Below, one piece after another: positions 23,913-52,871 of a stretch of DNA of 64,000 nucleotides. Below the pieces are notes generated by a model. That model had not been told where the DNA came from. It saw nothing but the letters and a program-made list of their open reading frames with translations, and ran no database searches. Origin of the DNA: Ostrea edulis (taxonomy: Eukaryota); the NCBI RefSeq assembly GCF_947568905.1, contig NC_079166.1, positions 75,268,001-75,332,000 of the forward strand, in the 5' to 3' direction. Made by a program: the position numbers and the translations under genes. Position 1 is the stretch's first letter; every line of letters starts with the position of its first letter.

Positions 23913-24138
23913 CTACTGCTGGCTAGCATTGTGGTGCATTGTATTGGGAAGGGTCGGTCGCTCCTCTAATTTATCATACTCCAAATGGAATTCCTTTGCA
24001 ACCCTTCTCCAGTTTTGTACGTCAAAGAAATAGTAGGTTCCTCGTTCGTACGTGGCTGATTTCATCAATGGTTCCACCCCCGGTGCTCTCGTGATCCACA
24101 CCCGCTCCTCCTTGTGATATCGCCAGTCTCTAGTGTAC
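23913..24138 (-). CDS. CNOT2: CNOT2 last coding exon (NOT-box C-terminus)
   Basis: YTRDWRYHKEERVWITRAPGVEPLMKSATYERGTYYFFDVQNWRRVAKEFHLEYDKLEERPTLP..QQ*; acceptor catttag. Confidence 0.97.
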
Positions 24139-27100
24139 CTAAATGTACATTTCAAGAAAAAAATCATAAATTAAATCTAACCTCAACATGTGCATACAGG
24201 GAAGGGTAATTTAAATATCCCTTCAAATTCTTCTCTTTTAAACATCTGAATACTTTAACAGAATTTATAACTGTTAAATTCAACTTTTTCTCCAAACAGG
24301 AAGTGTGAATTGCTTTAACCTGATCCTTAGAAACAACATTGTTATAATAAATAAAATGTGAAACTTACAGCTCAGCTGCTGCCGCTAACTGTATGAAATC
24401 ATTACCATTCATGTAGAAAAGAAAGAATAGCACATCTTCTCCATAGCGATTCAGTTTGATCGGAGCCAGCTGAAAGGAGAAAGAGATGTGGTCAGTGTAA
24501 GTATTGAGAAACTTACAGTGGTAGTGAGTAGTCGGAAAATTTGTTGTAACTGATCATCAGATCATCGTCGCAAACCACGGGTTATTGTTTCATTCTCTGA
24601 ATGAAACAATAACTCGTGGTTTGCTACGGTGTGAAATAGAATGAAACAATAACCTGTGGTTTGCTACGATGTGAAATAGAATGAAACAATAACCTGTGGT
24701 TTGCGACAATGTCATTAGATATGATAGGGAGCAAAAAACTGATCAATAATCCATTAAAATAATAGGTTCACTGTCAATATCAATACATGAATTCTTGAAA
24801 AGGAAGAATGGATTCCTTTTCAGTCAGATAGATTCTCTCAGGGTAAAAAAAAGTGGTAAAACGGTATTTTTATAGATTCAAATATACGTACTGAATGTTG
24901 TTGTATTTCATCAAAAAAGCATATAACTGTAAAATAGCTATACTAAGCCTTATCACTCGAAACACTATCAAGACTGAGGCCTTATACATGTACATGTAAT
25001 AGTGGAGGCCAATGAGTTAAACATTTCTACAGAATGTGACTTAGTGGAAGACTGAACACAAGTGACACACTAGCCTACAGAATGTGACTTATTGGAAGAC
25101 TGGACACAAGTGACACACAAGCATACAGAATGTGACTTAGTGGAAGACTGAACACAAGTGACACACTAGCCTACAGAATGTGACTTAGTGTAAGACTGGA
25201 CACAAGTGACACACTAGCCTACAGAATGTGACTTAGTGGAAGACTGAAGTTAACACAAGTGACACACTAGCCTACAGAATGTGACTTAGTGTAAGACTGG
25301 ACACATGTGACACACTAGCCTACAGAATGTGACTTAGTGGAAGACTGAACACAAGTGACACACTAGCCTACAGAATGTGACTTAGTGGAAGACTGGACAC
25401 AAGTGACACACTAGCCTACAGAATGTGACTTAGTGGAAGACTGGACACAAGTGACACACTAGCCTACAGAATGTGACTTAGTGGAAGACTGGACACAAGT
25501 GACACACTAGCCTACAGAATGTGACTTAGTGGAAGACTGGACACAAGTGACACACTAGCCTACAGAATGTGACTTAGTGGAAGACTGGACACAAGTGACA
25601 CACTAGCCTACAGAATGTGACTTAGTGGAAGACTGAACACAAGTGACACACTAGCCTACAGAATGTGACTTAGTGGAAGACTTGACACAAGTGACACACA
25701 AGCATACAGAATGTGACTTAGTGGAAGACTGAACACAAGTGACACACTAGCCTACAGAATGTGACTTAGTGGAAGACTTGACACAGGTCAAGTACTGGTA
25801 GTAGTGAGAAAGTGGAACTGTAATCATATTACAAAAGTGTTAATATAACGGTTTTTGTAACACATTTAAAGAGAAAAGTCAATGCACTCTTTGTACAGGA
25901 TGTGCACACACTGATAATTTGTTTAACAGGATGTTTGTGTACGGTGTAGATCATTCATCTTTGATAAGATCAGGAAATGATTTTTTAACAGACACTGTAC
26001 TTTCCAATTTGCTTTTAGTACTTTTGACATTCTAGTCTAAATTATGATCAACCCCAAAATATCAGTCTACAAGCATCTACCATAGAGCTGCACCAATAGC
26101 ACTAATTTATGATTTCTTAAAATCATTCCTGACCTACAACACAGTTACAGGTAAAAGTACACTCGCACCGACACTTAAATACTGCATGTATTGTGTTTGT
26201 CTCTGGTATGGTAACTGGTCTAGACAAGTAACATTAGATGAGGTTATGGGGGATTTATCAGGGAATTGTAAAGGAAGTTACCCAAGTGTATTCGATAGGA
26301 AATTACCTGGGGTGTACTCGATAACATTAGATTAAATTATTGGGGACTAATAGGGGACTTATATGGGGAGTTACCCGGGGTGTACTCACATTAGATTAAG
26401 TTATTGGGGACTAATCAGGGGATTGTATAGGAAGTCACCCAGGGTGTACTCGATAACATATTAGTTACGTTTTTGGGGACTAATGAGGGAATTGTATAGG
26501 AAGTTACCCGGGGTGTACTCGATGCACTTTAACATCAAAACAAATACAACTCAAAATAAAATCTTAAAGGCCTTGTTTACTGGGATACATTCTTCAAAAC
26601 TTTAGTGTATATTGCATTAGAATGAGGGATAAATCCCTGAAGGCTTTAAATTCTGTATATCCTAATTACATATACTAGATGATTATCTAAGTTCCTGTGT
26701 CCCCAGAATAACTTATTAACTTCCTTGTATGTAACCGATTTTTATCCAGTAAAATAAACCAGTGTCCGTAAGGAAACAGGTTATATTTGTGACATTAAAA
26801 AATAAATGTGTGCGAGGAAAAAGCCATTGTGGCATCACGCATTTCAAAACCATGTCACACCTGTTGTACACCTGGCATGGTTAATTCCCCCCCCCCCCCC
26901 CCCCCCCCCCCCGATAAATGGCCAATCAAAATAAAGTTATTTAACCAATCAGGATGTGTCATTCTAACTACAGTGGGAATAAAGTATCATAATTTAACTA
27001 TAGTCTAATTCAGTGCTGTATATAAAAGTGATTATTTACTTGTAACCATGACAACACCACTGTAATCTCAAATACAACATTATAAAACATTTCTAAATGA

Positions 27101-30100
27101 TTGTAATCATAAAATTCATACCTTGTCTCTCAGGAAAATGTTCGTTAAATACTCAACCGGCACATGATAATCTGAAGAAAGATTTATACACACATGTATA
27201 AGTAAAAGTATATAATGTTAATTCACATTTTCACAATTTTCATGAGGCATATAAAAAATCATCACTTTTGTACATAATTCTGTTTAATGTAAATCTTTCA
27301 CCTTTCTTTCTATAAATCAAAAAATTAAAGTAAACTGACTGGATAAAAGAAATTTGGCTTTGGGATGAGCATTCTGCAGTTTTGATGTTTAAAACTTCAG
27401 CAAGTCTTAAAGCAGCCCATTTCACTTTATATCTTAGTAAACTCGGCATGAGGATGTCTTTAACAAATTTTATACTTATTATTTTCTTGAAGATGACTCT
27501 AATGTATTTTCATACACATATAATTATACAGTTTTGGGTAAAACTCTGACCCCTTATTTTCTGGTCCCATACTAACCCCTCCCCCTTTCGGGCTCACATA
27601 TTGAACAAACTCAATACCACTCTGGGTCTACCTAAGAAAGCTGTCATGTAAATTTGATGAATTATATCCTTGTTTTTGACAAGACAATTTCAAGATATTT
27701 CCCCATATATTCCCATTGATCACGTTTCCCATTACAGGTAAACTTTGATATCTCACACTTGATAGGACTGAAGAAAAACTTCGAGATATCTGAGGGTTCG
27801 AGAAATCGAAGTTAATGAAATTGACACCAATATTGTGTAATGTTTTATGTTGTTCTATTTGACAGGTAAATAAACACACTTTAAGCGGTAAAAGTTTTAG
27901 TTTGAGATTAGGGATTTTCTAAAAATATGTATACTTGCATTTTCATATATACTGAGTATCTATTACTTTATTTGATGCTGCAAAGCTTACATTGTACGAA
28001 TTTCGGCCATTTTTCATAGCGATAATCACCTTTATCACGATCAGTTTAGTATTTCTGATACCCGGATTTGTGTTAAGCTTTGTAAATGATAAACCGATCA
28101 CTGTAATCATTATGAAGATGGAGACGGGAAATATCGTTATACAGTAATTTATGAAAATTGTTAGTAAACAAAAGCACTACAGTTATTATGATGAATTTGT
28201 TTCGATTGTATGAACCTTGTTTCCTTTTCACATCACTATCAGGTAATCCAACTCTCCCCCGGGTTGGATACCGGATCCTTCGTTAGATTGTTTATCAGAC
28301 ATGATGTGTACTGAAAATTTAGAATTTTGGAGCTGATATTCATAACAAAAGAGGTCTATAAATTGTTCAATTTCTTGATGTCCATATCACTTTGATGTGT
28401 TCAGGGTTAACATTGATCTGTAATAGCATGTGTAAGCGTGCATTACGACAAAATATCAGTGATCGTTCTCAGTTGCTTGTTTAATTATCGGGACATATTA
28501 CGTATAAATGTACATTTCTTTATCACCTCCAAACATCCATTCTGCATAATCAGATAAAGCTCCCAAATTAACAGCTTGGGGTTGATAAGGCGTGATTATC
28601 AGGAATAGTCCCACAAAGCCCGTGTTAGACCTAATGAAAACTTCCAAGTTATCGTAAATTAGCATAACGGGATGATTGTGTACTTCAGGTGTGAATTCAT
28701 TGGAGGGAGAAATTCTTGGACTTCGAGATAACGCATGTATTTTAGCACTTGGGACCGTAAATCTACTTCGAGATCGGCCAGGTATTCGAGATTTCCTTGT
28801 TTGAGATATCGGGGTTTTTCAAAACATGAATATAGTAAAAACCGGCTGGGGTCATCGACTCGCTTCGAGACATCTGTGGTATTCGACATATCTGAGTTCG
28901 AGATACCGAAGTTTACCTGTATTTGCACAAACTTGAATCTACACATAATCTACATTAGATTTCCAGATCAGTGGTAATCAATATTTCCCTTATTGACTGA
29001 TTCTTAATGTTGTTGGCAATGTGACCTTTCACCTGAACAATCAGGAATCCCCTTTATTTTAATTCTATTGAAGATGGCCTTGTGCTTCTTGTAATGGAGA
29101 AGAAAATGAGTCGGACAAGTTTATACATGACAAAAGTTTATTTCAGAACCTAACTTGAGTCTATTTTGGCTCAGGTGAGCTAACACTGGAGATTTGTGTT
29201 GCCATTGTCCCTGCAGACTAATTTGTTATAATAGGGTACAGTCACAATCCTTCACTGTTAATTATGGAATTAGCAACACAGTTTTTTATGGTACAGACCG
29301 GGCATTAATGTGTCGGAGAATGTAACAGTTGGTTTCAGTTTTGAAAATCAAGGAAACACGTTATAATTTAAAAGTGGTACAAAGTGGTGAAAGGCAGGAA
29401 CAGGTACATTTGTACATTCAAATTCAAAATATTATTTTCAGAGATAAGGGGGTCATGGGCTTTAATAGTTATATATAATTACTGTGTTACACACAAAAAT
29501 ATCACAACTGTCACAGACCACATCATGAATAATTAACAAATGCAGCTATTTATGAATGTTTTAATCCACAAATTTAAATCATTGTTTTGCCTTTCCATAC
29601 TGTTGGGACAGTGTTCATACCCACAATGGCTACCTTCCCTTCGGCCAAAAAAAAAAAATTATGTTGGTTTCCACTAACCCGACCGATCCTAAAAATTTCT
29701 GCCGACCCTAACACATTTTTTTCCATTCTCACAGATTTTGCGAATGTCATCACTACAACAAGAGTATATTTATTGACTTATTAAGCTATTTAATTAATTA
29801 TTAAGCTATTAAAGAGGAAAACTGGTCAAAAAGGGAGGAAAACACCTCATCCTACCTGGAAAAATATCATTTTCTGCCACTTTAGATCAAATCCAGAGCG
29901 TTTCATTTTTTCTTCTTCGAAAATTGAGCAAATCAGAGGATTTCCTCTGAAAAGAGGAAAACTCACACCCCTGTATTTATTATGCACTAACAGATTTCAA
30001 AACAGAGCACTAACAGATTCCAAAACACAGAAACAGTTTTTGTTTACAGTACAGTGGAAGAAATATTTTGATTCATCAGATAACTTTTATTTGATAACTA

Positions 30101-33100
30101 GACAATCACTATATTTTATGCATAGTAGAATACTAAATCATTAAAAAATAATTCAACCTAGTATAAAAAAAAAAACCCAAAAAAAACAAATTACTTACCC
30201 ACCAATCCTTTAATTTTTTTTTTAGGTGAAAGAGGAAACCAACATATTTCTTTTTGGGCCTTTTTAAAATTGTGATTTTGCAATTGTACTCTAAATGTGT
30301 CCTTATTGTACAAGATAGGGATATTTGATAGGGACAAAAGTCCAAAAATTAAGTAACTTATAGCTCAGCTATAAATAAATCATTAAATGGCAAGGTCATT
30401 CAGGAAGTATACATTATATTTTGTTTATTCCTTCTCTTTCATGCATTCACAAAACTTAACCCCATTTATTGCAAAGAAAGACTCTCAATTCTCTTTTAGC
30501 ATAATGTGGATTCAGAATAAACCTTTTCTTTGAAAACTAAATGTTGTCAGTGGTGTATTTTTGTATTTGAGTGCCTCAGGTGAACAAAAGACTCAGTAAC
30601 ATTGACAAAGAAGAAAGAGAAAAGTTACTCAAATTGAAACATATCAATATTTCTAAAACACTACCAGCAAACTTCAGATGTTAAAAGATATAAAAAAATT
30701 TCATCATGCTTGAAAATAGTCATAACTAAACAAACACATAAAATATAGAAAATTAAAAGTTAGAGACAAAATCAAACTATCAATCACAGAGGAGAAGCCA
30801 TGTTTGTAAGTGGGAGAGTACTTGGTGAAATTGTAAATTTTCTTCAATAAGGCCAAAAAACCTAATAGGTGTGTTTCCGGTTACCTGACCGACCCTAAAT
30901 TTTTCTCCCAATTCTAATTTTCCAAACAAATTCCAGTCCTTAATTTACACACTTCATTTCTAAAATAAAAAAAAAATGTAATAAGTTTGGGCTTGATTTT
31001 CAAGATTTACACAGATATATATGCAATCATGTATTAAAATAGGGTAAAATCAGTTGTCAAAATGTCATTTTTTGGTTTATTTTACCCAATAATGAACACT
31101 TGATGCTGCATGTCGGTACTCACAAACAAATGTATGTATCATGTACAAGTTTCTTCCCCAGTGATACAAGGCAATATTTACTGAATTTAAAAATAAATAA
31201 ATAAAAAATTTGCCGAACCCCGACCCTATATTTTTTTCAAGATATAATCGAAAACACACCTACTTTCTTTTTTTTCACCTAAAAAGAACAGGTAAATATT
31301 TGATTTGGTAAAATGTCTAGCATGGCAAAAGAAATGCTAAGATATGCACCATACAACACTACACAAGAAGTGAACTCAGACCTATATCTTGGGGTCGACA
31401 GGGAGAATCTGCCCAAGGCGATTGAAATGTGCTGTACAGATTTCTGCAAAAGTACAAGAAAGCTTTAGATCATACGCAAGCAATACAAGGTATTGCACAA
31501 GGAGATTGAGTTGGTCTCTTTCTGTTTATGTCAATCTTTCAAAATTTAAAGACATTATTGAACCATGCAGTGTGACAGTCATACATTTAACAATCATGGA
31601 TATTTCCCTCTTGATTTCTCCCATTCTACACTGTACTCAACAAAAACGAGATTGGTCCCTTTTTATTCTCAAAAACTATTTTATTAAAGGGAAACCCCTT
31701 GTGGTCATAGGTAAAACAAGAGGCCCATGGGACTAGAATCGCTCTTCTGATACATTGTAGAACAGGCAAAATTCTCACTAACCAAGATTCATCAATTAAC
31801 AAAGTTTGATTATGTTAATAAGTCAAATAGTACCTGAAAATTTAAATGTAACTGTCCAAAAGTAGGTCACAGTGACCTATTTTTGGTCGACACACTGAAT
31901 ACTCAAGATGCATCAACTGACAAGTCAAATAGTATTCAAATATAGCTGTCAAATTCCAAAAGAAGGCCACAGTGACCTACTTTTTGATCGACACACTCCA
32001 AAGACTCAAGATGCATCAACTGACAAAGTTTGATAATTGAAGTCAAATAGTATCTGAAATATTCAGATATAAACGTCAAATTCCAAAAGTAGGTCACAAT
32101 GACCTACTTTTCGGTCGACACACTCTGAAGACTCAAGACCCATCAACTGACAAAGTTTGATGATTGTAAGTCAAATAGTATCTGAAATATTCAAATATAG
32201 TCGTCAAAATCCAAAAATAAGTCACGGTGACCTACTTTTTAGTCAACACACTCTGAAGACTCAACATGCATCAACTGTCAAAGTTTGATAATTGTAAGTC
32301 AAATAGTATCTGAAATATTAAAATATAGCCGTCAAATTCCAAAAGTAGGTCACGGTGACCTACTTTTTGGTCAAAAAACTACGAAGACTCAAGATGCATC
32401 AACTGACAAAGTTTGATGATCCTAACTTTCATAGTGTCCAAAATATGCATCTAAAATTGAAAATGTGAAATTTGAATGTCTGCAAAATTCAAAAAGTAGG
32501 TCACTGTGACCTACTTTTTTTTTATAAATATGTTTTGAGGCCTCTAGATGCATCAACTTACAAGGTTTGATGATTCTAAACCTCTCAGTATCTGAAATAA
32601 CAACCTAAAATGTATTCATAAATGATTAGCCATAAAATTAAGAAAGAAGGTCATGGTGACATACTTTTTACATGACACACTTTAAGGTCCCATGATCCAT
32701 CAATTGACAACTTTTGATGATCATAGGCTCAAAACTGTCCAAGATATGCATCAAAATCCATTTAATATTAATTACCTGCGAAATTCAAAAAGTAGGTCAC
32801 CATGACCTACTTTTGAGACAACATGATATTAAGTCCGAAGATGCATCAACTGACAAAATTTGATGATCCTAGTCCTTATACTAAGCAAAATATCAAAGTT
32901 TTAAGAAAACAAAATTTAAGGTCAATTTTGAAGTGACCTTGAGACCACACCCTTTGCCCCAGAATGATGCCTTGAACATTTTTTTTTATCTACAACCTAT
33001 CCTCATCCTTGGTGATAATTTGACCAGTGGTTCTTGAGAAGATTTTTTAGCAACCACTACTTTTGTTTGCATTTTCCTAATTATCTCCCCTTATTAAAGG

Positions 33101-36100
33101 GTCACAACCCTAGTTTTAGTATAAATAAAAGCCCTTGGGCCAAGGATACCCTGTGACAAATTTGACAAAAATTGGCCAAGGGGTTCTTGAGATATAGCCC
33201 CTTTTCCAAAAAGTTGACGCACACCGCACGCCAGACATATGGCCATATGATTTGCTCTTTAAGCCTTCAGCTCAGAAGAGCTAAAAAAAGAAGAAATTTT
33301 TGACTGAAAATCGGATATTAAAGTCAACAAAATGTTTTTAAATAGTTTTACTTTTTGTAGAAGTATCATTTAACAAATATTGTACTTATCTATTTTCATC
33401 CAATGGGTTTCTCACAAATAAGGTCAACACAGTGCTAATTAGGTCACAAGCTACAGACTCCATGAGTAAACCATCAGCTCTCTGAGGTTGCTTGTTAGAA
33501 TTACATCTCATAGAAAAATGTTCACTCATATCCAGACATCCCCATTTGTACATGAAGTACCACAAATTTAGACCTATGTGTTCTTTAATGTGCCAACATC
33601 TGCCACATTCTGTGACCTTTGTTTTTAAGGTCATATCTGAAAGATCGCGAGATTCTTACGTCTGAATGCCAAGTGTTTGGCGAAGAAGCAATCGCTACCT
33701 ATGTTAACTTCTTAAGTTTGTCACAGTCATGGCACAAGCGGGACTCGAACTCATGACCTCCCAATTACGAAGCGAACGCTCTACCACTGTGCTACCATGA
33801 CCAGTAGCTCTTCGGGATTCTAAAGAATTACAAGTAACAAAATCTAAAGTCTCCTCCCAGAGCTTGAGAGTAAATCTGCTCATTTATGTAAGGGTAAAAT
33901 ACTGGACTGAGAGATTACTTTTAAAAATTGTGAACTTAAAAAGATCAAAAGAGAACAATATATTGATGTACGTTACAAAAACTGTCTTGCAGATAATTCA
34001 CAAGGAAAAATTGCAGAAATAAAGTCTCAGGAATATACAGTGTAAGTGATTGACAGAGCACAAACGGTATCAAAGTAAGTCTGCACACAGTGATGAATAA
34101 TACAGAAAGAGACCAACCAACCATGAATAATAAAGCTGCAGGATACAAGGTTAAAAAATAGTGCTGCCTCCACAGAGCAGACAGTTGTTAAGTCTCAATG
34201 TCTGCTCTGGGTAGAACACACAGGAAATAAAATCTACCTATGTCTTGAGGTCGACAAGGCGAGTCAACCCACGGAGATTGAAACGTACTGTACAAATTGC
34301 TGAAAAATTACCACATTACCATTAAGATCACTATATGCGATAATTGCATTTTTTTTAAAAAATTGAATTAATTATTGATTTTTTTTTTTTATGACAGTAT
34401 GATCAATTTCATCAACATGCGAACAAGGTCATGTGGTTTTAGCTTTTAAAATAATCAAATGTTCATCAAATCACTGAAAAGAAAACATTTTGATGACTGT
34501 TAAAATGATTGATCATCACAATATCATGCTCCCGTACAATATTGTTGGATATTTAAACTAAAAAAAAAAAATGCGACAACCTTGTTATACATGTCACACA
34601 TAATATATATGCTATATTTCATGAAGTTAATTAGTACTCCCGTTTTACACATTTACCTCCTGAATGTAAACTAAATCACTAATAACAATTCTATAGGCAA
34701 AACTTAAGAAAACAACCTGACAGATGAATAATAGTGTGTTCACGTACCAATATTGTGATTTATTAACCGACGGAAAATATTCTCATGAAAAGCTAAAACA
34801 CATCACTATTAGAAATGTTCAAGTACAAGCAGTTCAGTCGTTCTGTTCACTTACTCTGGAGAATTGAGATTTAGGCCTAGTGTGGTGAGATCTATCCCTG
34901 GTGCTAATGCTATCAGATTGTGGTCATTTTCATTGGCTGCCCTTATGAACGTTAACAGACCTGCGATCCCGAACTGGTCAGTCACCATCCCCGAGGGAAT
35001 ATTCGACACCATGCCTGTGGATGAATGAATGAATTTCAGAAAAAATTTCAATGTTGCATATTTCTTACAATGTAAACTTTTGACACATTGTCTTTGAAAA
35101 ACATTGATTCAGAACAATTCCTTTAAAAATTCCATGTGCGGAATAAAATCATAATGAAATAGATATCAAGAATAACGCACATTTCCTTGCATGAAAACCC
35201 TGTACAGACATTTCCCTATAATGAATTCCTTATCAAAAATTTGGGTATTATACAATATTCTTTATCTCCAACTCAGTAGCAGTCCATGTGAAAAACATAA
35301 AGAATTGTACAAAATTTACCTGTTTTCTTAAAGGCAGATAACTATGTATTTCTATTAAAAATACACATAAAACAAAAGGCTCACAGTTAAAGGTATCACT
35401 AGCCCCAAGGGCTACAAAGTCTACAATGGTTTTTTATCACATTGACCTCACCCTTGATTTGGTATCCATACCCCCGGGGTTGCGAAATTCACAATTTTGG
35501 TACATCCCTTTCTGATATTCCTAAATATGTGTGTAGTTTTTATATAGTATCAACAAAATTAAAGATATGTTTCAAATGATAAAGACATGCAATCAATGTG
35601 ACCATTTCGGTCCACCCTGGCAACATAACCATACCCCTGTGATCAGGAAATTTTCATTTTTGGTATAGAACTACGTACCTGCTTCTTCTAAATATCAAAT
35701 TTATTTCAATTTAGTATCAACAGCATTCAAGAGAATGCTAACTTTATATTTTACACAAACACTACATGCTGAGTTTGGCCCCACTCTGGAGTCAGATCCT
35801 ATACCCCAGGGATCACGAAATATACAATTTGGGTAGAAGGCATCCTGCCCTACAGACATGCAGTCATAGAGAAGATTTTTGAAAACTGGTCAATTTTTGT
35901 CCCGCACCTAAGGCCCAGGGGTACAGGAGTCCTGAAATTTACAATTTATGTCCCCATTATCCAAAATATGCTTCATACCAAATTTGAAAAGAATCAAGAT
36001 GTTAAAAATGTTCAATTGTTAACACATGAGGATAGGCACAGACCAATAGCAATAGGTCACCTGTAAGACTCGAGTGACCTAAAAAGTGATACAATTTTTC

Positions 36101-39100
36101 TGTCAATTATTTTATAAGCATATACACTGTAACTTACACTCCTAGTATTGTAAAACATTAAAAATATTCTTTTGTAGGCTTTTTGGATAAGTAACCCATT
36201 CTCTATGCTGCATGATTTTTAAATGGACTGCTACTTCAAGTGAATTCTGAGAGAAAACACAGATAATTTTTTTTGTCATTGTTTGAAATCCACCATGCAT
36301 GAAGCTGGACTAACCATCTGCATGGGTCTGTATGCCCCGCTTTGCCAGGTTCGTCTTATCCCCGGGAAATTTTCCGTCTTTCAGAATTTGTTCGTTTGAT
36401 GACGATGATGAAACACTTGTTGGCTGCAGAAGAGTAAAATAAAAAATACTGATCTTACATTAAACCAAATAAATACAATTCAATCAGGTTCCTATCCAAA
36501 GTATCACTTCAATATATCAATGATAGCTCAAGTAAATGGATATCAATTGACAATGGATATCCTTATCAGTCTATTAAACTGTGTTCAAACAGTTTCACAA
36601 ACCTCCACATCTGCTTTAGTTAAGTGAATGAATGCAAAGTACACTATCAATGTCTGGCATTTTGACTTAGGTGTCTTTAGGGGTGAGATCAAAAGAGCGA
36701 TGTCGGATAAAAATCTTAATTCGAATAGTTAGGGGGAAGGGGGATGAAATTCAGGAAAGTTTCTGTCATACAACATCGATTACACTCACGTGGAAAATGA
36801 AAAAAAAAACAAACAAAAAAAACAAGCAACTGTTTAAAAACCACATAATATTACATTTTAAAGTAATTCCACCCTCCTGTGATGTTATCAGCTTTTGTAA
36901 AATCAATTATTTAATAGATTTATGCACATTATGAACATCAATTTTGTTGTAATTATTGTAAAAAAAGCTTTTTAAAAATAAACTAATTTAAAGGTCTATG
37001 TTATATATGAATAATCAATGATATGTTTCAAAATATTAAATCCAAGGGCAATTACTCTGTTTCCATTGATTTCTTTATCAAGTCTATTATACGATAGGTT
37101 TCCTTTATTTTTTACTGACATTTTGTATATTTTTGTGATGAAACGGTTTCATGAAATTGTTATGAATGCTATGGTATCGTCATAACCAGTTTTTATGAAA
37201 TTTTGATATATGATTCTGTTTATGTATGTCTCGCATCTTAAAAAGTGTGATGACCTATACATTTTATTTGATAATTTGTTAGTTTTAACTCTAATAAATG
37301 GAAATAAATGCACTTTTTAAACTTGTGTCAGATAAAACTGCGAATATGGGGTTACTTTAGTGAACATCTAATAGTTTTATTGTACACTTTCATTTGTGAA
37401 TAAACCGTAAAAAAAGGTATACAGAGTGTTATCTATAATCGTATGTTTTTACTTGTTAATCAATTAGTTTCAACAGTCATCATATTTAGTTTTAAGAGGA
37501 ATGGGGGGTAGGTGGGTGGGTGTGGGGGGATGGTCTTGGTAAAAACTCTGTGAAATTTAGTTTTTGTCAGACATTGAACTTCTGATCTCGCGCCTTATGC
37601 ATTCATCTTCAAAATCGATACAAATTCTATGCAGAGGTTTAAGGGCCCAAGAAAGTAACAGAATTGCTAATATTACAAATGGTGATAAGACAAGCTGGGA
37701 AGTGAGAAAACATTTCATTGGGTCTGTTTCACATTGCAAAGTATTCGAAAAAAAAGTGTTCATTGAAAACTGCCTAATCCGACACTTGTGCAATTTGTTT
37801 CACTGGGCATTCTCACCCTTATTTTCATTCTCAATTTCATATTTTCATTGTTTTTTTACACTGTTTATTCAGCACAATGTGTATTCTGACAAAAAATGTC
37901 TCCCAGTGCATGTCGAATTAGACAGGTTTCAATGTACATAAAATATACCTATCAAAAATGCTACTTAATACAAATTGAAATACATAATTATACATGTACA
38001 TGGAGCATTCCATGTTAATTTTTAAGTACCCGCTCACTGGTGACATATAAGATTGCTCATTTGTATGTCGGTAAGAATTTATATGTAGTATATATTAGTG
38101 AATATGGGGAAATTAACACACTTGGAGCTTCAAAGGGTTATCACAGAGAAAACAGTTGCATATGTAGATATTGATTTTTTTTTATCTAGTGTGTTACATG
38201 TATAATATGGAATGCATGTGCAGACAATCTGAATCAAACTTTTAATTAGCTATTCTCTCGCATGTAACTGATTTGATATGCAATGTGACAACAAATGTAA
38301 TTTGCATTTTGGCATTGTGAAATTACGCTGATGTTGTTGTTCTATAGACTCCCTGGGATTTTGAGGACTTTGTGAAGTAAAACATGTTGGAATGAGCATA
38401 TCAATAACCTTCACATAACCGAGGTCTGACGAGAAAAGAACTCACCGTTTTCCTGGCTGCATCATTAGCTACGCTTGTTGGTGGATCTACAAATAAACAA
38501 CGTACATGTACATCTGAATCTGTCCCGACAGCTATAGTATGTAACACAAAAGTATGTTACCTCTAGTCATTTGAAGGAAGTTCACGATGCGTTTTATTTG
38601 TCCGTATCATATATGTTAATGTGTCTTGAAGGAAGAGAAAGTTGCATTTTACAGTTTTACATTTATATTTTACTTGTATTTTAATTTTTTGATACGAAAC
38701 TGAAAAAATAAGGAAGTTGATGAATCATACAGGACAATGTCTGTCTTACTCTGTGCTCCAGGAAGAGCCGGGAAGTCTTCCTGCTGGATCTGAAACTCAG
38801 GCGCTGTCTCCGTGACTGGTTTACTCACCATGCCCACTGTAAAATTCAAATATGCCAATATGCAATTGTTCAGGTGAGCACGTATGTAGACGTTTGCCAT
38901 ATAAAGTAAAATCAAACCCTACACTGACCATAATTTCTGACAGAGGAGATTGGTGTGGATGGAAGGTTTCTATTTCCTAGGGTAGGGAATTCAGATAGGT
39001 CCAAACCGGGCTGATCGGCATCTGTTCCGAATACTGTCAAACAGAAAGTGAAAGTAACATTTACAAACAGAAAATAAAAACAGAAAGAAGAGATTGACAT

Positions 39101-42100
39101 GTACATCTAGCATCATCATGATCATATACATTCCAGAACAAATGCTATACTATGTTTAATTCATTATGATTATATAGCAAGTAGGATATGTAAAATATGT
39201 TGCCTGGGCTATAATCTTTCAAAATATCCTGTAACTGAAGAAGTAGAACAGGTAGCTAATACAGAAAAATAATGTCGAATGTAAATATTCTGTGTCGTAT
39301 AAAACGAGATTTTCTTAATAGATAGAATTACATTTGAATGAAAAGAATTTCAATATGTATCTCCTTTTTTATCAATGCTTACATGTATGTGTCACCGCTA
39401 AAACTAAGTCTGTGACCTTTAAATCTGCATTTAAAGGGCAAATATCTCTTTCTGATCATGCAAAATAAAAAAAAAATGTGGATGGTATATGAAAACTTGA
39501 TAATGAATTATCTTCCATCCATAAATGCCAAATATCAAAACATTGTGTCTGTTGCACTTGTAAGTCCAACATTAAGGTGGTACAATATACAATTTGGTGG
39601 GAGTTTTCATGCCATGTGCCTTGGGGAATAGCTGGTGACACATGAACATCTTATCACGTCTACAGTGTTCGAAATTGGTTTAAAACTTGGTAAAGACCAC
39701 GGGTCTATGCCAAAACAAGATGACATAGACTTTATTGTATTGGCATAGACCACAACATTGAAAAAAAATAACACAAAATTAATTTAAAACATTGTTATCT
39801 ACTTATAATGTACTTAGAAAGCATATTTTCTTTCTATTTCCATAACAACATCCTCCTTTCCTCATAACATTTATCAGACGACGACTGACCAGGGTATTTG
39901 GGATAACTTTATGTTGATCAGACGTCGACGTTTGGGATAATTCTATTGCTTTAAACCTAGAAAAACGGTATAGAAAATTTGGTCCATCTCAATCACAATA
40001 CAATTGGCATAGACTAGTGTCATCTGACCTAGACTCAGTCTATCAATCTATGGTTAATTTCGAACACTGCGTCAAATGAACTTGTTACTTAATACTTATG
40101 CATATTCATGAACTTCTACTTAATACTTACGCATATTCATGAACTTCTGTTCTGGAGTGTTGTATACCGTGGAGTACTTGCTCTGGCGATTACTTTGCCC
40201 AAACACAAAGTTGTTGTTAATACTGGACATTGGACCACTAAAATCAACAAAACACATCATGTCACCATACTAGACTTAATCACTAGAGACTCTGATAGAC
40301 ATCATATTACTATACCAGACATATTCACTAGAGACTCTCAGAGACATCATGTCACTAGACATTCACTAGAGTCTCTCAAAGACATCTTTTACTATACTAG
40401 ACATATTCACTAGAGACTCTTAGAGACACCGTGTCACTATACTACAGGGCTTGAAGCTAACTTTTTATGTCACCAGTCCAGCCAGACTGATGGGGTATAA
40501 TTTCAACCAGTCCGCAGAAAAATTTACCAGTCCAACAGAGTTTTCCAGAAATAATTAAACATATTTAATTTCGTTAATGTTATCAAAATGAAATTTAGCT
40601 CAATATGTCTCAGACAATATTGTAACACTTAAATGTGGGATTTATATTTACGAATCAGATTCGTCTGATATCTACAGATCAAAGCATGCCAAATGTGTGT
40701 ATAAGATTTCATAAGTATATGCTTTAGAAAATTAACCAGTCCCACCGGACTGACTAAAACAAATGTCAGTCAGTCCGCCAGACTTTTAACCAGTCACAGA
40801 CTGACGGGCATATGTTAATTTCGAGCCCTGTACTAGATGTATTCACTAGAGACTCTCAAAGACATTGTGTCACTATACTAGACTTATTCACTGAAGGTTC
40901 TCAGATAAAACATAATTAAAACATGTTTCATGGAGATCATTTCTTTAACACAATCTTTTCATATATATATAGAATGAACAATTTTAGACTAAATCTACAC
41001 CTGAACTTTTACCTGTTTTGTAATTTGGTCATGGACTGACTTGTCTGGTTCTGGGAGATTCTCTGACCTCCAATAGCAGATATCATGTTCCTAAAAATAA
41101 AAACAATGACATAGAAATACAACATCAGAAATATATGAATCATTAATGTAATAACATACAGTGTAAATATAACAGCATTACATTATTATTGCAATCGACT
41201 GACATTATCTTACTATTGAAATTAACTGACATTATCTTACTATTGAAATTAACTGACATTATCGTACTATTGAAATTAACTGATAATATTAACTGACATT
41301 ATCGTACTATTGAAATTAACTGATAATATTAACTGACATTATCGAACTATTGAAATTAACTGACATTATCGTACTATTGAAATTAACTGACCTTACCCTG
41401 CTATAGTAATTAATTGACCTAATTGCCTTACTAGATTATTTGGACCTTACCTTACTATTTAGATTAACTGATATTACAACATTATTGTAATTAACTGATA
41501 TTATGACATTATTGTAATTGACTGACATTACCTTATTGTAATTGACTGTGATGTTACAACATTATTGTAATTGACTGACAATACCTTATCTATTGCAATA
41601 GACTGACATTACATTAATGTAATTAACTGATATTACATTATTGTAATCGACTGATGTTACCTTATTCTGATTGACTGGATTACATTATTCTGATTGACTG
41701 GCATTACATTATTCTGATTGACTGGCATTACATTATTCTGATTGACTGGCATTACCTGCTAGGTGAGGGCTGTTGTTGGGGTTGCTGTAGGTTATAGGGA
41801 AGGTTCATACTTGTGGGTGTGGAGTTATTTCCCCTGAACTGGGGCCCAGACACAGCCCCTCTCTGAGGCAGGGCTGCAAAGTTTCCTGCCAAACTCGCAT
41901 TTGTTCCAAGTCCCGAACTTCCGCCTATCACGGCAACATAAAGACTAACATTGTCATAAAGCAGAATATGACCTAATGCTCTTTGCTTCCAATTGATATA
42001 TTTTGAATTCATTCATAATTCTTCATTCATTTAATTCTTTGCATGATTATGCATATCAACATGAGAAGTTACTTCCCTTACATTGTAATTTTCTTCATAA

Positions 42101-45100
42101 CTTAAGCAATACAATTTCCCACATTTTTAAGCAATATCAACATGATCAAAGATTAGCTTGAAGACGAAGAAAATGATTCCTAAGTATATTAATTGTAATT
42201 TGACCTTGTGAGTAAAAGTTGGATACTCCAAATGTCGAGAGTTGTGAGGGAGACTGTGACATCATCTATGTAGAAAAAGTGTTCATTCAGCATCAGAAAA
42301 AAATCTAATTGTAGATGTTTTAAATCTAACAAAAAAGGTTCTCTGAAGTTTTCAATATTTTAAATCATAATGTAAATGCTCTCCAAGAGATATCAATACA
42401 TCAACTTACTGCTGTGGAGAATACACTGGGTATGTATCATAATGCACTGAATATGATCCCCTTCATTTCAAATTCCAAATGCAAAACAGGAATCTTAGAA
42501 AAACTCTAGACACTTATAAACTTACGTCTCTATCTGGTCGAAACACTTTGGCAGAATTTGACATGGCACCCTGTCCAAGATCTAGTTCACTGTCATCTTC
42601 TAAGTTCAGAGAAAGAATCTACAAGAATTCATGGAAAAAGGCCTTCATTTTGTGCCATTACCTGGAATATTCAGAAAATTTTAAAGACGTCTAATCTCTT
42701 TTATGATAGAATAAAGTTGTGATATTTTACATTTTGTTTTGTGATAGAATAAAGTTGTGATATTTTACATTTTGTTTTGTGATAGAATAAAGTTGTGATA
42801 TTTTACATTTTGTTTTGTGATAGAATAAAGTTGTGATATTTTACATTTTGTTTTGTGATAGAATAAAGTTGTGATATTTTACGTTTTGTTTTGTGATAGA
42901 ATAAAGTTGTGATACTTTACGTTTTGTTTTGTGATAGAATAAAGTTGTGATACTTTACATTTTGTTTTGTGATAGAATAAAGTTGTGATATTTTACATTT
43001 TGTTTTGTGATAGAATAAAGTTGTGATATTTTACATTTTGTTTTGTGATAGAATAAAGTTGTGATATTTTACATTTTGTTTTGGCGGCCCAGGGGGCATC
43101 TGCTGACCCAGAATCTTTCTCGACCCAGGGGATAATTCCCCCGTCCCCTTTCGGCCCAAGCCGTATCTGAAATATACAGAGATAAGTCATTACATATCCA
43201 GTACTAATTATTGCTTTCTAGACTAATGTTTTCTTTATACTCAGCAGATATTGCCTGGGTTAACTTTTCTTAAAAGTAGGTCAAACTCCAAGGTCAGGGT
43301 AACAAAGTCAAAAGAGAGGTTTTGTCAAAGGGAATGCACATATGAAATACTTGAGTCCTAACCTTCACAATATAAAAATTATGAGGTTAAAGTTTTGGTC
43401 AGAATGAACAATATGACCCCCCCCCCCCCCTTAGATCTCGGGAGCATAATATTAAGGGTGGTATTTCTCTGCATATACCATCTTCATGTATATCCGAATT
43501 TTCTTCCTTTTGAATCCAAAGCAGGTTATTTCGTATACTTATATGTGGGAATGAATTCCTGTTTCAACTGGTAGCACAATAATTGACTATGGTGGGTATC
43601 CTTACAGTTACCCAGTCACCCTCTCCTGACTGCTAGTGATCCCAGTAATAGAAGAGCGGGGAAAAGACGTTTGGACTAATGAGATCTGGATTTCTGTACA
43701 TTAGTACTCAAGATGCATACAAAAAATATGGTTTGTTTTTTTCAATTCGTGTAATCTTTGCTAGGTATGCATGCCTGTAACAAGTCAACTTACACCACAC
43801 AAAAATAATGGGCTATAGTTGAGAATATGTCCAGCTTCAAGTTAAATGCAAACAGAACGACCAAAAACAATATCCCCATGATGCATGTGTTCGGTACCAG
43901 CATAAAACTGCCAGACATGTGCATAATCGTAGTTTTCTTTGGAGTTGTATAAATTTAAAGTACAATTAATATATTTAACTTCGCTAATTCTTGTAAATAG
44001 TTTTAACACATACATGTATGGGTAAATTAGCAATACAAAGGTTTTTATCAATGATTTCAGACATGTCAGATTCACTATAACTACATTGGCTCTTGGTGGT
44101 GACTAGCCCGTGATAAATACTGTCACTAAAATATTGTAGGGAAAATCTAAATCTTAATAGTAAAACTAGAACTATAACCAGCTGGTAACAGGTACTTTTG
44201 AATTTCAATGGTGATGAAAGTCTTTAGACTACAAAATAACAGTATAATTCATGTACCATATCACTGCATTAAAATCAAGTCTCCCTATTTTCATTTGTTT
44301 TCTTTTTCAAAAACATCATCTTAGATGATCTTTAAGGAGGTGTGCTACACCAGAGAAATTTGATGTAGATGAAAAGTGGAAGATATGTACAAAAATATTT
44401 TGAAGTTGAAAATTTTCAAATTTACTTTATTTTGTCAAAAAATACAGTTTTATTAGAAGGTAATCTGAAAAGAATTTAAAACCCCTGCTGTACCCGAACC
44501 TGCGACCTACAGTTCAGTAGTCGGTATTCTAACCTACTGAGCTACTCGACTAGGTATCTAAATGGAAAAGGAAAAGTAAAATATTGCTGATATCGATTTT
44601 TTCACCCATGTTTTTAAAGGAAGTCAGCCATTATGACGATGTAGAGTACTACCTTAATCAAAACTGTAAATCATCTGAAATTTATACTACTTTATACATG
44701 CACATGATATCTTATGCCTATAAACACGATAGATGTTTGATACGATGAAATCAAATGCGAACTTTGAATCTTATTCTTTGAAACAAATCTGCAAAACTTA
44801 AATAGATGAAATTGTTTTTGTTGTGCATCAGTGACATAGTACTAATATGGACATTTGGTTGCTTTTTAAGTTAGATTAAAATGAAAAGACCCCAGTAATA
44901 AAATGAGTCATGTACATTCTGATAGAAAACAAACAAAAAAGGGGGTCCTCCTTATGCAGTGGCGTAGCTTCCATTGAGGCAACCGAGGCAGCTGCCTCGG
45001 TAAAAAAACCACCTTTTACGTTGTTAAAATGTCAATAGCTTCTGGGGGACACAGCCCCCCAGACCCCCTTGCCTCGGTAATATTCGAACCCAAGCTACAA

Positions 45101-48100
45101 CTATGTTTTGGAATGTAGGCAATCAGTAAATAAGTTTTTTTCTATAAAATTTGTGGTGACCTTGACCTTTTGACCCTAAAATCAATAGGGTGCTTCATAA
45201 CTTCATAACACTTGATAACAATGCTATATCAAATCAATTTAGCAAAACCGTCATCTGTTAAGTATCAACAAGTGTTTTCAATGCAGTCCTGTAGTGACCT
45301 TGACCTTTTGAACCCAAAAATCAATATAGGTCTTCCTTTCTTGATAAATGAAGCAGGAAATCAATGGAGCAAAAACTGTGGCCTGTAGAGTGTCTGCAAG
45401 CTCAGTGTGACACTTAAACATACTCATACAATCATGCACAAACTGGCCCAATATTATATATCCCCTTTCATAATGAAACTTTTGAATTGGACACTACGTA
45501 ATGCTAGGTTACAAGAAGTTGGTGTAAGATACATGTATGATTATATATCACAAAAGATAGTCGAATCTTGCTTTTACATCCAAGTCTGGTTTTGCTGCAA
45601 TCAAACATGGTGCAAATGAAATAAAACAATAGATACAAATGCACATAACATAAATACATGTATACTATACACATTTGGGTAAACATGATACAAATGTAAC
45701 ATGAACAACAACAAATCAACTGGATCAGACATTAACCAACAGACCAAAAAAAAAAAAAGGACTGAATTTAAGGGATTGACAAGGTATGAATAAAAGAATG
45801 CAGACAGCGCAATTCATGACAAGTTAAGGTCTGATGAGCAGGATTTCATTCCCTTGCAAAAACCATTCAATGAAAGATGACACAAATGCCATTCTGCATG
45901 CAATGAAAATGAACATGATGAGGTCATGCTTCACTGGATAAAAGCTCGATTCTCTTGCCTAAATCCAAGTTTGAAATTGTCACAGATTCTAATAGTGTTT
46001 ATAAACTTTTTGATGACCGCATGCATATGCAACTGCTGTGCTTTTAAAGATGTAGAGTAAAATATACTTCACATTTGCATGAATGACTCTTGCAATATCT
46101 AACCTATATTTATATATCAAATGATTTAGCCTTTGCTATCTCTGCAGATTGTATTGATAACCATTTCCTCATAAATACATTGCAGTTTTAAACAATGCGC
46201 GTATGAATGCCAATAAAAATAGTGCATTTATTTTTACGATTGGGATTTCTGACAGAAGCTTCACACAATGTGTTTGAAATACACGACACTATGAACTGCA
46301 GTGCTTCACGCCGGCACGACACTATGAACTGCAGTGCTTCACGCCGGCGTACTTTTCATGAAGCGCCTATGTTGGCATGAAGCTCGCTGTTCGTGTCGTC
46401 ATCCATTTTCAAAAATGAAATATATTTCTTAACTGAAACAAAGCTTTACACATGCACAGAATGTGTGCTATTTGTAGTAGGTGATTCGCATAAAGGGTCC
46501 AGTTTATAAACAAATTGCTGCCAATCTTAAGACAGTTTTCGTTGACCGCAAGTAGTAAAATTTATTTTTTCCATATTCTTGTGAGCACAGTTCCATCATC
46601 TATATATTTGGTGGTCATTTGATGTTAATATGAACATTGAACATGTTAAACATCTGTTGTTAAGCAAGCCTACATTTGATAAAATAGACCAATTAATTAA
46701 TCATTACTCCCCACTGTTTCAATAGTTTCAAAAAGTACTTCACCTAAACTTGCATGGTAAAGTTTTCCTGTAAAGTCAGAGAATAGTCAGACATAATAAA
46801 AAAGTTTAGGAACTTTCAATGTAGTCAAGTATGCTAAAAGGGGCATAAGCTGTCAACTTGGACAAAAACTTTAAAATTCTGAACCGTGATTTAATTTATT
46901 GTTGAAATGTGTTTAAAAATGAAGCGAAATAAATCCGAGAGTGAAAAATAGCGACCTTCAATCGAATTTTATGAATTTTTTTTATAAAATGTCTCCGCAA
47001 TTATTTACTTAAGTACAAAAATGCTTCTACCATTCTTTTTTTAATTAAATAAAAAGAAAGAAATTCTAACATAAAAATTACAACAAAAGATTACATTCAA
47101 GATGTTACATTTGAAATTAAAAATTTCTAATATGGCATAGGTGATTTTTATGTACTGCAAAGCTGTTTTAGTCAGTTTGGTAATGATTTGATAACATGTA
47201 CAGGTACACAGCATCATCTCCTAACTTGTTTTAGTTAAAAAACACAAATTACAGGTTTAAACTTCTTCACAACATCATTAAATTGAATTAAAAATATCCT
47301 TAAAAAACATTGTTAATTTTAACATCATTTCATGAACTTTAGAGTTGGTCATTTTTAGGTTTTACAGGCCTCATGTATATTTCAGTAAGAAACAGTTTAT
47401 TCAAAAACTTACACTTAATGCATTAAGACTTGATACTTGCTACAAACAAACCTTATTTTCCAAAAACGATGAAAATGAATTTCAAAGTTATGTTACCCTG
47501 CATAAGGAAAATGAATACATTTCACCACTTGGGATTTCATTCTTGACCAAAATTTCTCAATTATGTCCAATACCATTGGAAAACGTTTAGAGAGTTTCAC
47601 ACACATAGGGAGGGGCAATATATCACAATTTCTGAACATCATAACAATTATACAAGTTCCTAATATTTCAGGAATTTAATAGTTAATATACTAATTACAA
47701 CCAAAATAAGCCAATAAAACGATACATCAACCCATCTATCCAACTATTTGTTTGTAGCAATTTTCCTTACAGCATATTACGTTCCAGTAACTAACATGTG
47801 AAAAGGTTAATGGGACATTGTAAGAAGCTGGGCCACCTGTGTAACTGTGACAGAATCAAACTGAACGGGCTGAATGTACTCACTGTGTGTTCCAAGATAA
47901 TTGGTCGGTCATAAACCTTCTAAATAAACCAGAATATCATTACTGCAGAGTCTGGATTTGTTGGAGAATTTGAGACACCATTCTTTAAAAGCCTTTGATA
48001 TTTCATACAAATATTAGTAAGATGTGTTCATGTCAGTCAGTTTAAGCCTCAAAAATAGTTCACACCTGATGAAAAATAAAGTCTTGTTTTCCAGAAACAC

Positions 48101-52733: not shown

Positions 52734-52871
52734 NNNNNNNNNNNNNNNNNNNNNNNNNNNNNNNNNNNNNNNNNNNNNNNNNNNNNNNNNNNNNNNNNNN
52801 NNNNNNNNNNNNNNNNNNNNNNNNNNNNNNNNNNNNNNNNNNNNNNNNNNNNNNNNNNNNNNNNNNNNNNN
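52734..52871. other. Assembly gap (138 N)
   Basis: Run of N. Confidence 1.

What the first reader, a model, noticed from the sequence alone, without database searches (positions are those of the whole stretch)
31382..34299. Duplicated, mutually exclusive 62-nt exon in CNOT2 just upstream of the NOT-box
Two exons 2.8 kb apart encode (D)NLYSTFQSPWVDSPCRPQDI(D) and (E)NLYSTFQSPWADSPCRPQDI(D). Both have intact AG/GT sites and identical length and phases. They differ at 13 of 62 nt, 11 silent and only 2 replacement (E/D at the junction, A/V), and their flanking introns show no visible similarity. This indicates an old duplication with purifying selection on both copies. Including both puts a TAG at the last codon of exon B. 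Skipping both gives TGA early in the next exon. Either outcome removes the NOT-box and leaves downstream junctions, so exactly one exon must be used. The segment matches human ENLYPKFASPWASSPCRPQDID, in the CNOT1-anchor/connector region of the NOT module. It may therefore tune assembly of the deadenylase complex or provide an NMD-coupled dosage switch. I know of no description of this, but cannot search.
Basis: partly seen in the sequence, partly recalled or inferred. Interest (0 to 1): 0.8.

Follow-up and report, generated by a model that had tools for sequence, protein, structure and literature searches.

The report
Ancient either-or exon pair in oyster CNOT2
The flat oyster's CNOT2 gene, which encodes a core part of the mRNA-deadenylating CCR4-NOT complex, carries two old 62-base copies of one exon of which exactly one can be spliced in; the pair is real, shared with mussels and scallops and already in automated gene models, but it is an ordinary example of a known splicing device.

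Summary
Exon A (34299-34238) and exon B (31443-31382) lie on the minus strand. Both are 62 nt with AG/GT sites, and they differ at 13 nt but only 2 residues. Using both gives TAG; using neither gives TGA.

The window matches Ostrea edulis CNOT2-like at 100% over its exons. RefSeq already lists isoforms with exon A (X1, X3) and with exon B (X2, X4).

The same two exon types, a "Val-type" (W-V/I/K-D-L-P) and an ancestral "Ala-type" (WADSP), appear as alternative isoforms in Mytilus species and Argopecten. A mytilid contig holds both exons intact, in the same order.

- Crassostrea keeps the Val exon plus a decayed Ala pseudo-exon.
- Saccostrea keeps only the Ala exon.
- Mya and Sinanodonta have only a Val exon.
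- Non-bivalves have only an Ala exon.

The pair is therefore an old tandem exon duplication, at least as old as Pteriomorphia, kept by purifying selection, with exclusivity enforced by reading frame.

RNA contigs of a close relative join the upstream exon directly to exon B. I did not see direct RNA proof for exon A in Ostrea. Any functional difference between the isoforms is untested.

I found no paper describing it, and the scan had not noted it before on other DNA. It is a new member of a known kind, of moderate interest.

The parts
23916..48605 (-). Coding span of the CNOT2-like gene (Ostrea edulis RefSeq isoforms X1-X4)
   Evidence: tblastn of P0307 and P0296 against the window: exons match at 100% from residue 1 (48605) to residue 550 (23916). 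PF04153 NOT2_3_5_C is recorded for these proteins.
34855..35013 (-). Constitutive exon upstream of the pair. It ends ...GLNLNSP plus GA, with donor GTAAGT.
   Evidence: RNA contigs of runs X6 and X7 join 36314>35013 and 34855>31443.
34238..34299 (-). Exon A, the proximal 'Val-type' alternative exon: (D)NLYSTFQSPWVDSPCRPQDI(D)
   Evidence: AG/GT sites intact. Used in RefSeq isoforms X1 and X3. It is orthologous to the only exon Crassostrea uses, and the alignment runs about 30 nt into both flanks. dN/dS against Crassostrea is 0.03.
31444..34237 (-). Intron of 2794 nt between exon A and exon B. It is rich in repeats and far too long for steric exclusion.
31382..31443 (-). Exon B, the distal 'Ala-type' (ancestral-type) alternative exon: (E)NLYSTFQSPWADSPCRPQDI(D)
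   Evidence: AG/GT sites intact. Junction 34855>31443 appears in RNA contigs of X6 and X7. Used in RefSeq isoforms X2 and X4. 88% identical to the single exon of Saccostrea.
27121..27171 (-). Constitutive exon downstream of the pair: (D)YHVPVEYLTNIFLRDK
23916..24469 (-). Last two exons, which encode the NOT-box (about 24469-24371 and 24137-23916)
   Evidence: They align to the NOT-box construct 4C0F.

Best explanation
The window holds the CNOT2 (NOT2) gene of the European flat oyster, Ostrea edulis, or a near-identical genome. Exons A and B are a tandem-duplicated pair of mutually exclusive exons.

Exclusivity comes from the reading frame. Each exon is 62 nt, which is not a multiple of three. 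Transcripts with both exons or with neither carry an early stop codon upstream of three or two exon junctions. They would give a protein without the NOT-box and would probably be removed by nonsense-mediated decay. That last step is inferred.

The two productive mRNAs encode CNOT2 proteins that differ at two residues, D/E at the junction and V/A. These lie in the extended peptide just N-terminal of the NOT-box, equivalent to human residues 393-414, with the variable positions at human A404 and S406. According to published structures, this region contains the NOT1-anchoring and connector segments.

The duplication is old.
- The proximal copy acquired the Val/Ile/Lys-Asp-Leu signature.
- The distal copy kept the ancestral Ala-Asp-Ser.
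- Both types persist in Ostrea, mytilids and scallops.
- Crassostrea lost the distal copy.
- Saccostrea lost the proximal copy.
- Mya and Sinanodonta, the two heteroconch genomes read, carry only a Val-type exon.

What the choice does for the cell is not known. I consider subfunctionalised, probably tissue- or stage-dependent, splicing with a subtle effect on NOT-module contacts the most likely reading.
For: Shown directly:
- Anatomy and frame logic.
- All window exons match O. edulis isoforms at 100%. X1 and X3 carry the exon A sequence; X2 and X4 carry the exon B sequence.
- RNA contigs of a close relative (3/159 nt different in the upstream exon) join 34855>31443 with GT..AG ends and run on into downstream exons.
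- Both exon types occur as alternative isoforms in Argopecten irradians and in Mytilus edulis, trossulus, galloprovincialis, californianus and coruscus.
- A mytilid contig (L010) has two intact copies in the same order, Ile-type then Ala-type.
- cDNA-length contigs encode the Ile-type (P0294) and the Ala-type (P0286) in mytilids.
- Crassostrea has an intact Val exon, then 330 nt on a decayed copy with an in-frame TAG and no AG or GT (L013; L005-L009). All Crassostrea isoforms and transcript-derived proteins are Val-type.
- Saccostrea has a single exon that is 88% identical to exon B and 81% to exon A.
- Selection: A versus B has pS 0.85 and pN 0.02. A versus the Crassostrea Val exon has dS 0.77 and dN 0.02.
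- All non-bivalve CNOT2 proteins listed carry the Ala-type.

From papers: the region N-terminal of the NOT-box holds the NOT1-anchoring region and the connector sequence (PMC4032980, PMC10590902).
Against: - No RNA junction into or out of exon A was seen. The two RNA-like runs with coverage show only the B junction. The bin holding exon A has a mean depth of 1.4 in one run and 0 in the other. Contigs drop minor variants, so this is weak evidence against use of A.
- RefSeq models can be built partly from cross-species protein alignments, so isoforms X1 and X3 alone do not prove that exon A is spliced in Ostrea.
- A 62-nt tree of the copies is unresolved. Monophyly of the Val-type copies is neither supported nor rejected (p-AU 0.32). 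A single origin rests on residue signatures and on exon order.
- Loss of either copy in sister oyster lineages shows that neither is indispensable.
Confidence: 0.8

Rival explanations
1. Exon A is a recently silenced relic in Ostrea. Only exon B is spliced in, and RefSeq isoforms X1 and X3 exist because Val-type proteins from Crassostrea were aligned to the genome.
For: Only the upstream-exon-to-B junction appears in RNA contigs. Exon A has the weaker polypyrimidine tract and lacks the consensus G at donor position +5. Oyster lineages have lost one copy or the other.
Against: Exon A keeps AG/GT and an open frame. It shows only 8/62 differences from the Crassostrea exon, 6 of 7 in-codon changes being synonymous (P = 5e-4 under neutrality). 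The unused copy in Crassostrea has lost both splice sites and gained a stop over a comparable time. Contigs cannot show absence.
Confidence: 0.12
2. The pair mainly serves as a dosage switch. Regulated inclusion of both exons or of neither yields NMD targets that lower CNOT2 output, and the two protein versions are equivalent.
For: Both non-productive combinations create early stops upstream of several junctions. The Ostrea proteins differ only by D/E and V/A. Either copy alone suffices in Crassostrea and Saccostrea.
Against: No both-exon or skip-both junction was listed in the RNA contigs, and no such isoform is annotated. The residue signature of each copy is conserved across orders, Val/Ile/Lys-Asp-Leu against Ala-Asp-Ser, which points to selection on the proteins themselves.
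Confidence: 0.07
3. Assembly artefact: one exon was duplicated by mis-assembly of haplotypes.
For: None beyond the general possibility.
Against: The copies differ at 21% of positions and have unrelated flanks. Each has its own orthologue in other oyster genera. The two-copy arrangement recurs in independent assemblies of other bivalves.
Confidence: 0.01

Closest known systems
Mutually exclusive exons born of tandem exon duplication (reviewed in PMC9013439, PMC9741552, PMC5740500)
   Same: Adjacent homologous exons of equal length and phase. They are ancient and under purifying selection, and they yield isoforms that differ only in a short homologous segment.
   Different: The host gene, CNOT2, is not in the catalogues I could search. 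The event is restricted to bivalves. Exclusivity rests on frame incompatibility, and no competing RNA structure was found.
coq-2 mutually exclusive exons of nematodes, annelids and molluscs (PMC7434440)
   Same: A lineage-restricted pair of homologous alternative exons in a housekeeping gene. The pair is present in oysters and differs at a few residues.
   Different: For coq-2 a biochemical consequence is known (rhodoquinone versus ubiquinone synthesis). For CNOT2 none is known, and either copy has been lost in some oysters.
Human/yeast CNOT2 (Not2) N-terminal extension in the NOT module (PDB 4C0D, 5FU6, 4BY6; PMC4032980)
   Same: The alternative exon encodes the counterpart of human residues 393-414. 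This lies inside the crystallised 350-540 fragment and N-terminal of the NOT-box.
   Different: The vertebrate CNOT2 proteins returned all carry the Ala-type there. Whether a vertebrate gene holds a second copy was not examined; the human locus was left unsearched on purpose.

Membership tests
Tandem-duplicated mutually exclusive exon pair | Two neighbouring exons that are homologous, of equal length and in the same phase | tested here: met
   62 nt each, 49/62 identical, 19/20 whole codons encode the same residue
Tandem-duplicated mutually exclusive exon pair | Both copies have usable splice sites | tested here: met
   AG acceptors and GT donors at both. Judged from sequence only.
Tandem-duplicated mutually exclusive exon pair | Mature transcripts carry exactly one of the two | tested here: inconclusive
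   The B-only junction is seen in RNA contigs. RefSeq isoforms carry A or B, never both. No direct RNA read across exon A was obtained.
Tandem-duplicated mutually exclusive exon pair | A mechanism that forbids double inclusion and double skipping | tested here: met
   Frame: A+B gives TAG and skipping both gives TGA. Steric hindrance is excluded by the 2794-nt intron. None of the three donors is of the U12 type. No docking/selector pairing was found near the exons, which does not exclude one.
CNOT2 / NOT2 subunit of CCR4-NOT | C-terminal NOT-box (Pfam PF04153) preceded by the conserved extended peptide | tested here: met
   Window exons are 100% identical to O. edulis CNOT2-like proteins carrying PF04153. 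The homologous vertebrate fragment matches PDB CNOT2 chains.
NMD-coupled (unproductive) splicing switch | Stop-containing isoforms are made at regulated levels and degraded by NMD | not testable with these tools
   Needs raw RNA-seq with and without NMD inhibition. Only the positions of the stops are shown.

The most novel reading that the evidence does not exclude
The Val-type and Ala-type exons give two functionally distinct CNOT2 proteins. They would differ in how the anchoring/connector peptide binds CNOT1 or CNOT3, or a NOT-module partner, and would be deployed in different tissues or stages, for example germline against soma. This would be a bivalve-specific way of diversifying the deadenylase, kept for more than 400 million years.
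Probability: 0.25. Interest if true: 0.55.

Novelty: new member of a known kind. Interest (0 to 1): 0.38.

Why it matters
CCR4-NOT is the main mRNA deadenylase, and CNOT2 is needed for its integrity. A conserved either-or exon in the peptide that ties the CNOT2-CNOT3 dimer to CNOT1 offers a natural pair of variants for probing that interface. The oysters supply a built-in comparison: Ostrea has both exons, Crassostrea only the Val-type and Saccostrea only the Ala-type. The case also shows cleanly how an exon pair can persist for hundreds of millions of years and still be resolved by reciprocal loss. It does not reveal a new mechanism.

Tried and rejected
- **Read laying.** The two small 'mollusc metagenome' and organism-A runs had no coverage of the exons, so only X6 and X7 were informative. 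All runs were contigs, so no junction counts were possible.
- **Word search with the NOT-box ORF of L003.** It returned no bivalve transcript fragments.
- **Look-ups of P0002 and P0330.** They found no contig.
- **ML tree of the 62-nt copies.** It was unresolved. Held-together Val-type copies were not rejected (p-AU 0.32), so I do not use the tree for dating.
- **Search for a third copy in the window.** None was found.
- **Search for docking/selector complementarity.** It found only a palindromic tandem repeat in the A-B intron and low-complexity matches.
- **Boland et al. 2013.** The paper is not held. I therefore could not place the variable residues precisely in the anchoring region or the connector sequence.
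- **Rejected mechanisms and explanations.** Steric hindrance and U2/U12 incompatibility as the exclusivity mechanism, and assembly artefact.
- **Human-like protein.** P0130, a Logan-derived protein, turned out identical to human CNOT2 chains in the PDB. P0131 is a chimpanzee fragment. I used P0130 once, for residue numbering, and did nothing further with either.
Full report
**Observation**

The gene lies on the minus strand. Exon A (34299-34238) and exon B (31443-31382) are both 62 nt. Each is flanked by AG and GT, and each is read as one base, 20 codons and one base.

The two exons differ at 13 positions. In the whole codons there are 11 synonymous changes and one replacement (Val/Ala). The split first codon gives Asp with A and Glu with B. 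With 12 in-codon changes, at most one replacement has a probability of 5e-7 under random substitution. Similarity ends at the exon borders, and blastn-short finds no further copy between 27000 and 35200.

I translated the four possible splice products:
- Upstream+A+downstream is open.
- Upstream+B+downstream is open.
- A+B runs into TAG at the last codon of B.
- Skipping both gives TGA five codons into the next exon.

**What the gene is**

Stop-free segments of the minus strand already showed CNOT2-like exons. A search with the upstream exon gave a full-length molluscan CNOT2 (P0166). A word search with that protein, restricted to the region around the alternative exon, returned named proteins.

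Four Ostrea edulis RefSeq isoforms match the window exons at 100% from residue 1 (48605) to the stop (23916). X1 and X3 contain the exon A peptide (SPD-NLY...WVDSP). X2 and X4 contain the exon B peptide (SPE-NLY...WADSP). X1 and X2 differ from X3 and X4 by a separate 12-residue cassette.

So the window is O. edulis or something nearly identical, and the exclusive pair is already present in automated annotation. No listed isoform has both exons or neither.

**RNA evidence**

All runs offered were Logan contigs. In two RNA-like runs of a close relative (3 differences in the 159-nt upstream exon), a contig of depth 265 in one and 207 in the other joins 34855 directly to 31443. The skipped ends are CT..AC, which is GT..AG on the minus strand. 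These contigs cover all 62 nt of exon B, continue into downstream exons, and also show the upstream junction 36314>35013.

Exon A has essentially no contig coverage there: a mean depth of 1.4 in its bin in one run and none in the other. Contigs suppress minor variants. This shows that B is used and is probably the major form in those samples. It does not show that A is unused.

**Relatives**

The upstream-exon search also returned many short genomic ORFs. I fetched the contigs that carry them and scanned each for the alternative exon between the conserved upstream and downstream exons.

| Source | Alternative exon(s) found |
|---|---|
| Mytilid contig L010 | Two intact copies with AG/GT: Ile-type (WIDLP) first, Ala-type (WAEST) 770 nt later |
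| Crassostrea L013 (assembly GCA_025612915.2) and L005-L009 | Intact Val exon (WVDLP); about 330-345 nt on, a decayed Ala-type copy. In L013 it has an in-frame TAG and no AG or GT. In L005-L009 it lacks the GT donor and differs by indels between runs. L013 has nothing else up to the downstream exon |
| Saccostrea echinata L014 | One exon, WADSP |
| Mya arenaria L015 | One Val exon, fused to the downstream exon |
| Sinanodonta woodiana L016 | One Val exon |
| Non-bivalve loci L001-L004 and L012 (taken as non-bivalve from their likeness to annelid-type proteins) | One Ala-type exon |

At the protein level the pattern is as follows:
- Both types are annotated as alternative isoforms in Argopecten irradians and in five Mytilus species.
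- Only the Val-type is listed for Crassostrea, Mya, Dreissena, Ruditapes and the unionids.
- Only the Ala-type is listed for Saccostrea, Solemya, gastropods, a cephalopod, a chiton, a brachiopod, annelids, nemerteans and vertebrates.

Contigs short enough to be cDNA encode the Ile-type (P0294, 530 aa on 1764 nt) and the Ala-type (P0286, 522 aa on 1996 nt) in mytilids. This is evidence independent of RefSeq models.

**Orthology and selection within oysters**

The Crassostrea Val exon aligns to Ostrea exon A over 119 nt, running about 30 nt into both flanks. The Saccostrea exon is 88% identical to exon B and 81% to exon A.

Ostrea and Crassostrea differ at 26 of 159 nt in the upstream exon, and every one of those changes is synonymous. 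Neutral sites are thus about half changed. Exon A differs from the Crassostrea Val exon at only 8 of 62 nt, with dS 0.77 and dN 0.02. The unused Crassostrea copy has meanwhile lost both splice sites and its frame.

An exon that had been idle in the Ostrea lineage would be expected to look like that pseudo-exon, and exon A does not. This is my main argument that exon A is functional, but it is an inference.

**Age**

Synonymous sites between A and B are saturated (pS 0.85), so there has been no recent gene conversion.

The proximal copy carries Val/Ile/Lys-Asp-Leu in the two lineages where I saw the gene order, Crassostrea and mytilid L010. Scallop Val-type isoforms carry the same signature, though I could not check their exon order. 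The distal copy carries the ancestral Ala-Asp-Ser. This fits one duplication before the pteriomorph orders split.

The only exon of heteroconchs also has Val-Asp-Leu/Met/Ile. The duplication may therefore predate the autobranch radiation, with the Ala copy lost in heteroconchs. I give this about two chances in three, because convergence is possible.

A tree of the 62-nt copies has no supported branches. It neither supports nor rejects a single Val-type clade (p-AU 0.32).

**Mechanism**

*Shown:* frame incompatibility of double inclusion and of double skipping.

*Excluded:* steric hindrance, because the intron between the exons is 2794 nt, and U12-type donors.

*Not found:* conserved complementary docking and selector elements. 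The inverted-repeat scan returned only a palindromic tandem repeat inside the A-B intron and low-complexity matches.

*Inferred:* removal of the stop-containing products by nonsense-mediated decay, since the stops lie upstream of two or three junctions.

Neither alternative exon's donor matches the consensus as the upstream exon's GTAAGT does (A: GTAGAT; B: GTCTGA). This is usual for regulated exons.

**Place in the protein**

A vertebrate fragment identical to PDB chains 5FU6_B and 4C0D_B fixes the numbering. The exon corresponds to human CNOT2 393-414. The positions that distinguish the two types correspond to A404 and S406. The NOT-box construct 4C0F begins roughly ten to fourteen residues after the end of this segment.

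Reviews describe this N-terminal extension as a NOT1-anchoring region followed by a connector sequence that wraps around the CNOT3 NOT-box (PMC4032980; PMC10590902). I could not read the primary structure paper, so I cannot say which of the two segments holds the variable residues.

**Novelty**

Full-text searches found no description of this event. They combined CNOT2 with mutually exclusive exons, oyster or bivalve, and mutually exclusive exon with Crassostrea. A catalogue paper on human events does not mention CNOT. The earlier notes of this scan hold nothing on it.

The device itself is well known, and automated annotation has already captured the isoforms. I therefore rate it a new member of a known kind.

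**Verdict**

This is a real and well-conserved exclusive exon pair. The functional ideas are open, and reciprocal loss in sister oysters tempers them. Interest is moderate.

Noticed in passing
window 47884-47919 (minus strand): A 36-nt cassette exon encoding QRFMTDQLSWNT near the N-terminus. It is present in O. edulis isoforms X1 and X2 and absent from X3 and X4. It is independent of the A/B choice in the annotation.
   Followed up: partly
window 31855-32815: The intron between exon A and exon B holds a tandem array with a period of about 128 nt. Each unit has a 29-nt palindromic core (AAAAGTAGGTCAC..GTGACCTACTTTT). Matching contigs are very deep in runs X6 and X7, so it is a genome-wide repeat family.
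   Followed up: no
window 29639-29720; L013 10342-10419: An 84-nt intronic stretch downstream of exon B is 74% identical between Ostrea and Crassostrea (E = 8e-6), although the rest of the intron does not align. It could be a conserved regulatory element or a shared repeat.
   Followed up: no
L014 10976-11302 (Saccostrea); L015 14665-15045 (Mya): In both species the intron after the upstream exon contains several tandem, decayed copies of the 3' end of that exon. In Saccostrea the match runs on into the donor region. In Mya the repeat period is 113 nt and the donors are decayed. The two cases look independent and might act as decoy splice sites.
   Followed up: no
L015 15387-15497; L001, L003, L004: Intron losses around the site. 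In Mya the alternative-type exon is fused to the downstream exon. In the loci taken as non-bivalve the downstream exon is fused to the first NOT-box exon.
   Followed up: partly
P0166 (Gigantopelta aegis X3) and P0279 (Haliotis rubra X4), residues after ...LNSP: Gastropod isoforms carry a 3-residue insertion at exactly this exon junction (SPE-YVR-NLY and SPD-SKR-NLY). This looks like an alternative donor 9 nt downstream, a different way of varying the same spot.
   Followed up: no
window 52734-52871: A run of 138 N (assembly gap or masked stretch). I left it untouched.
   Followed up: no
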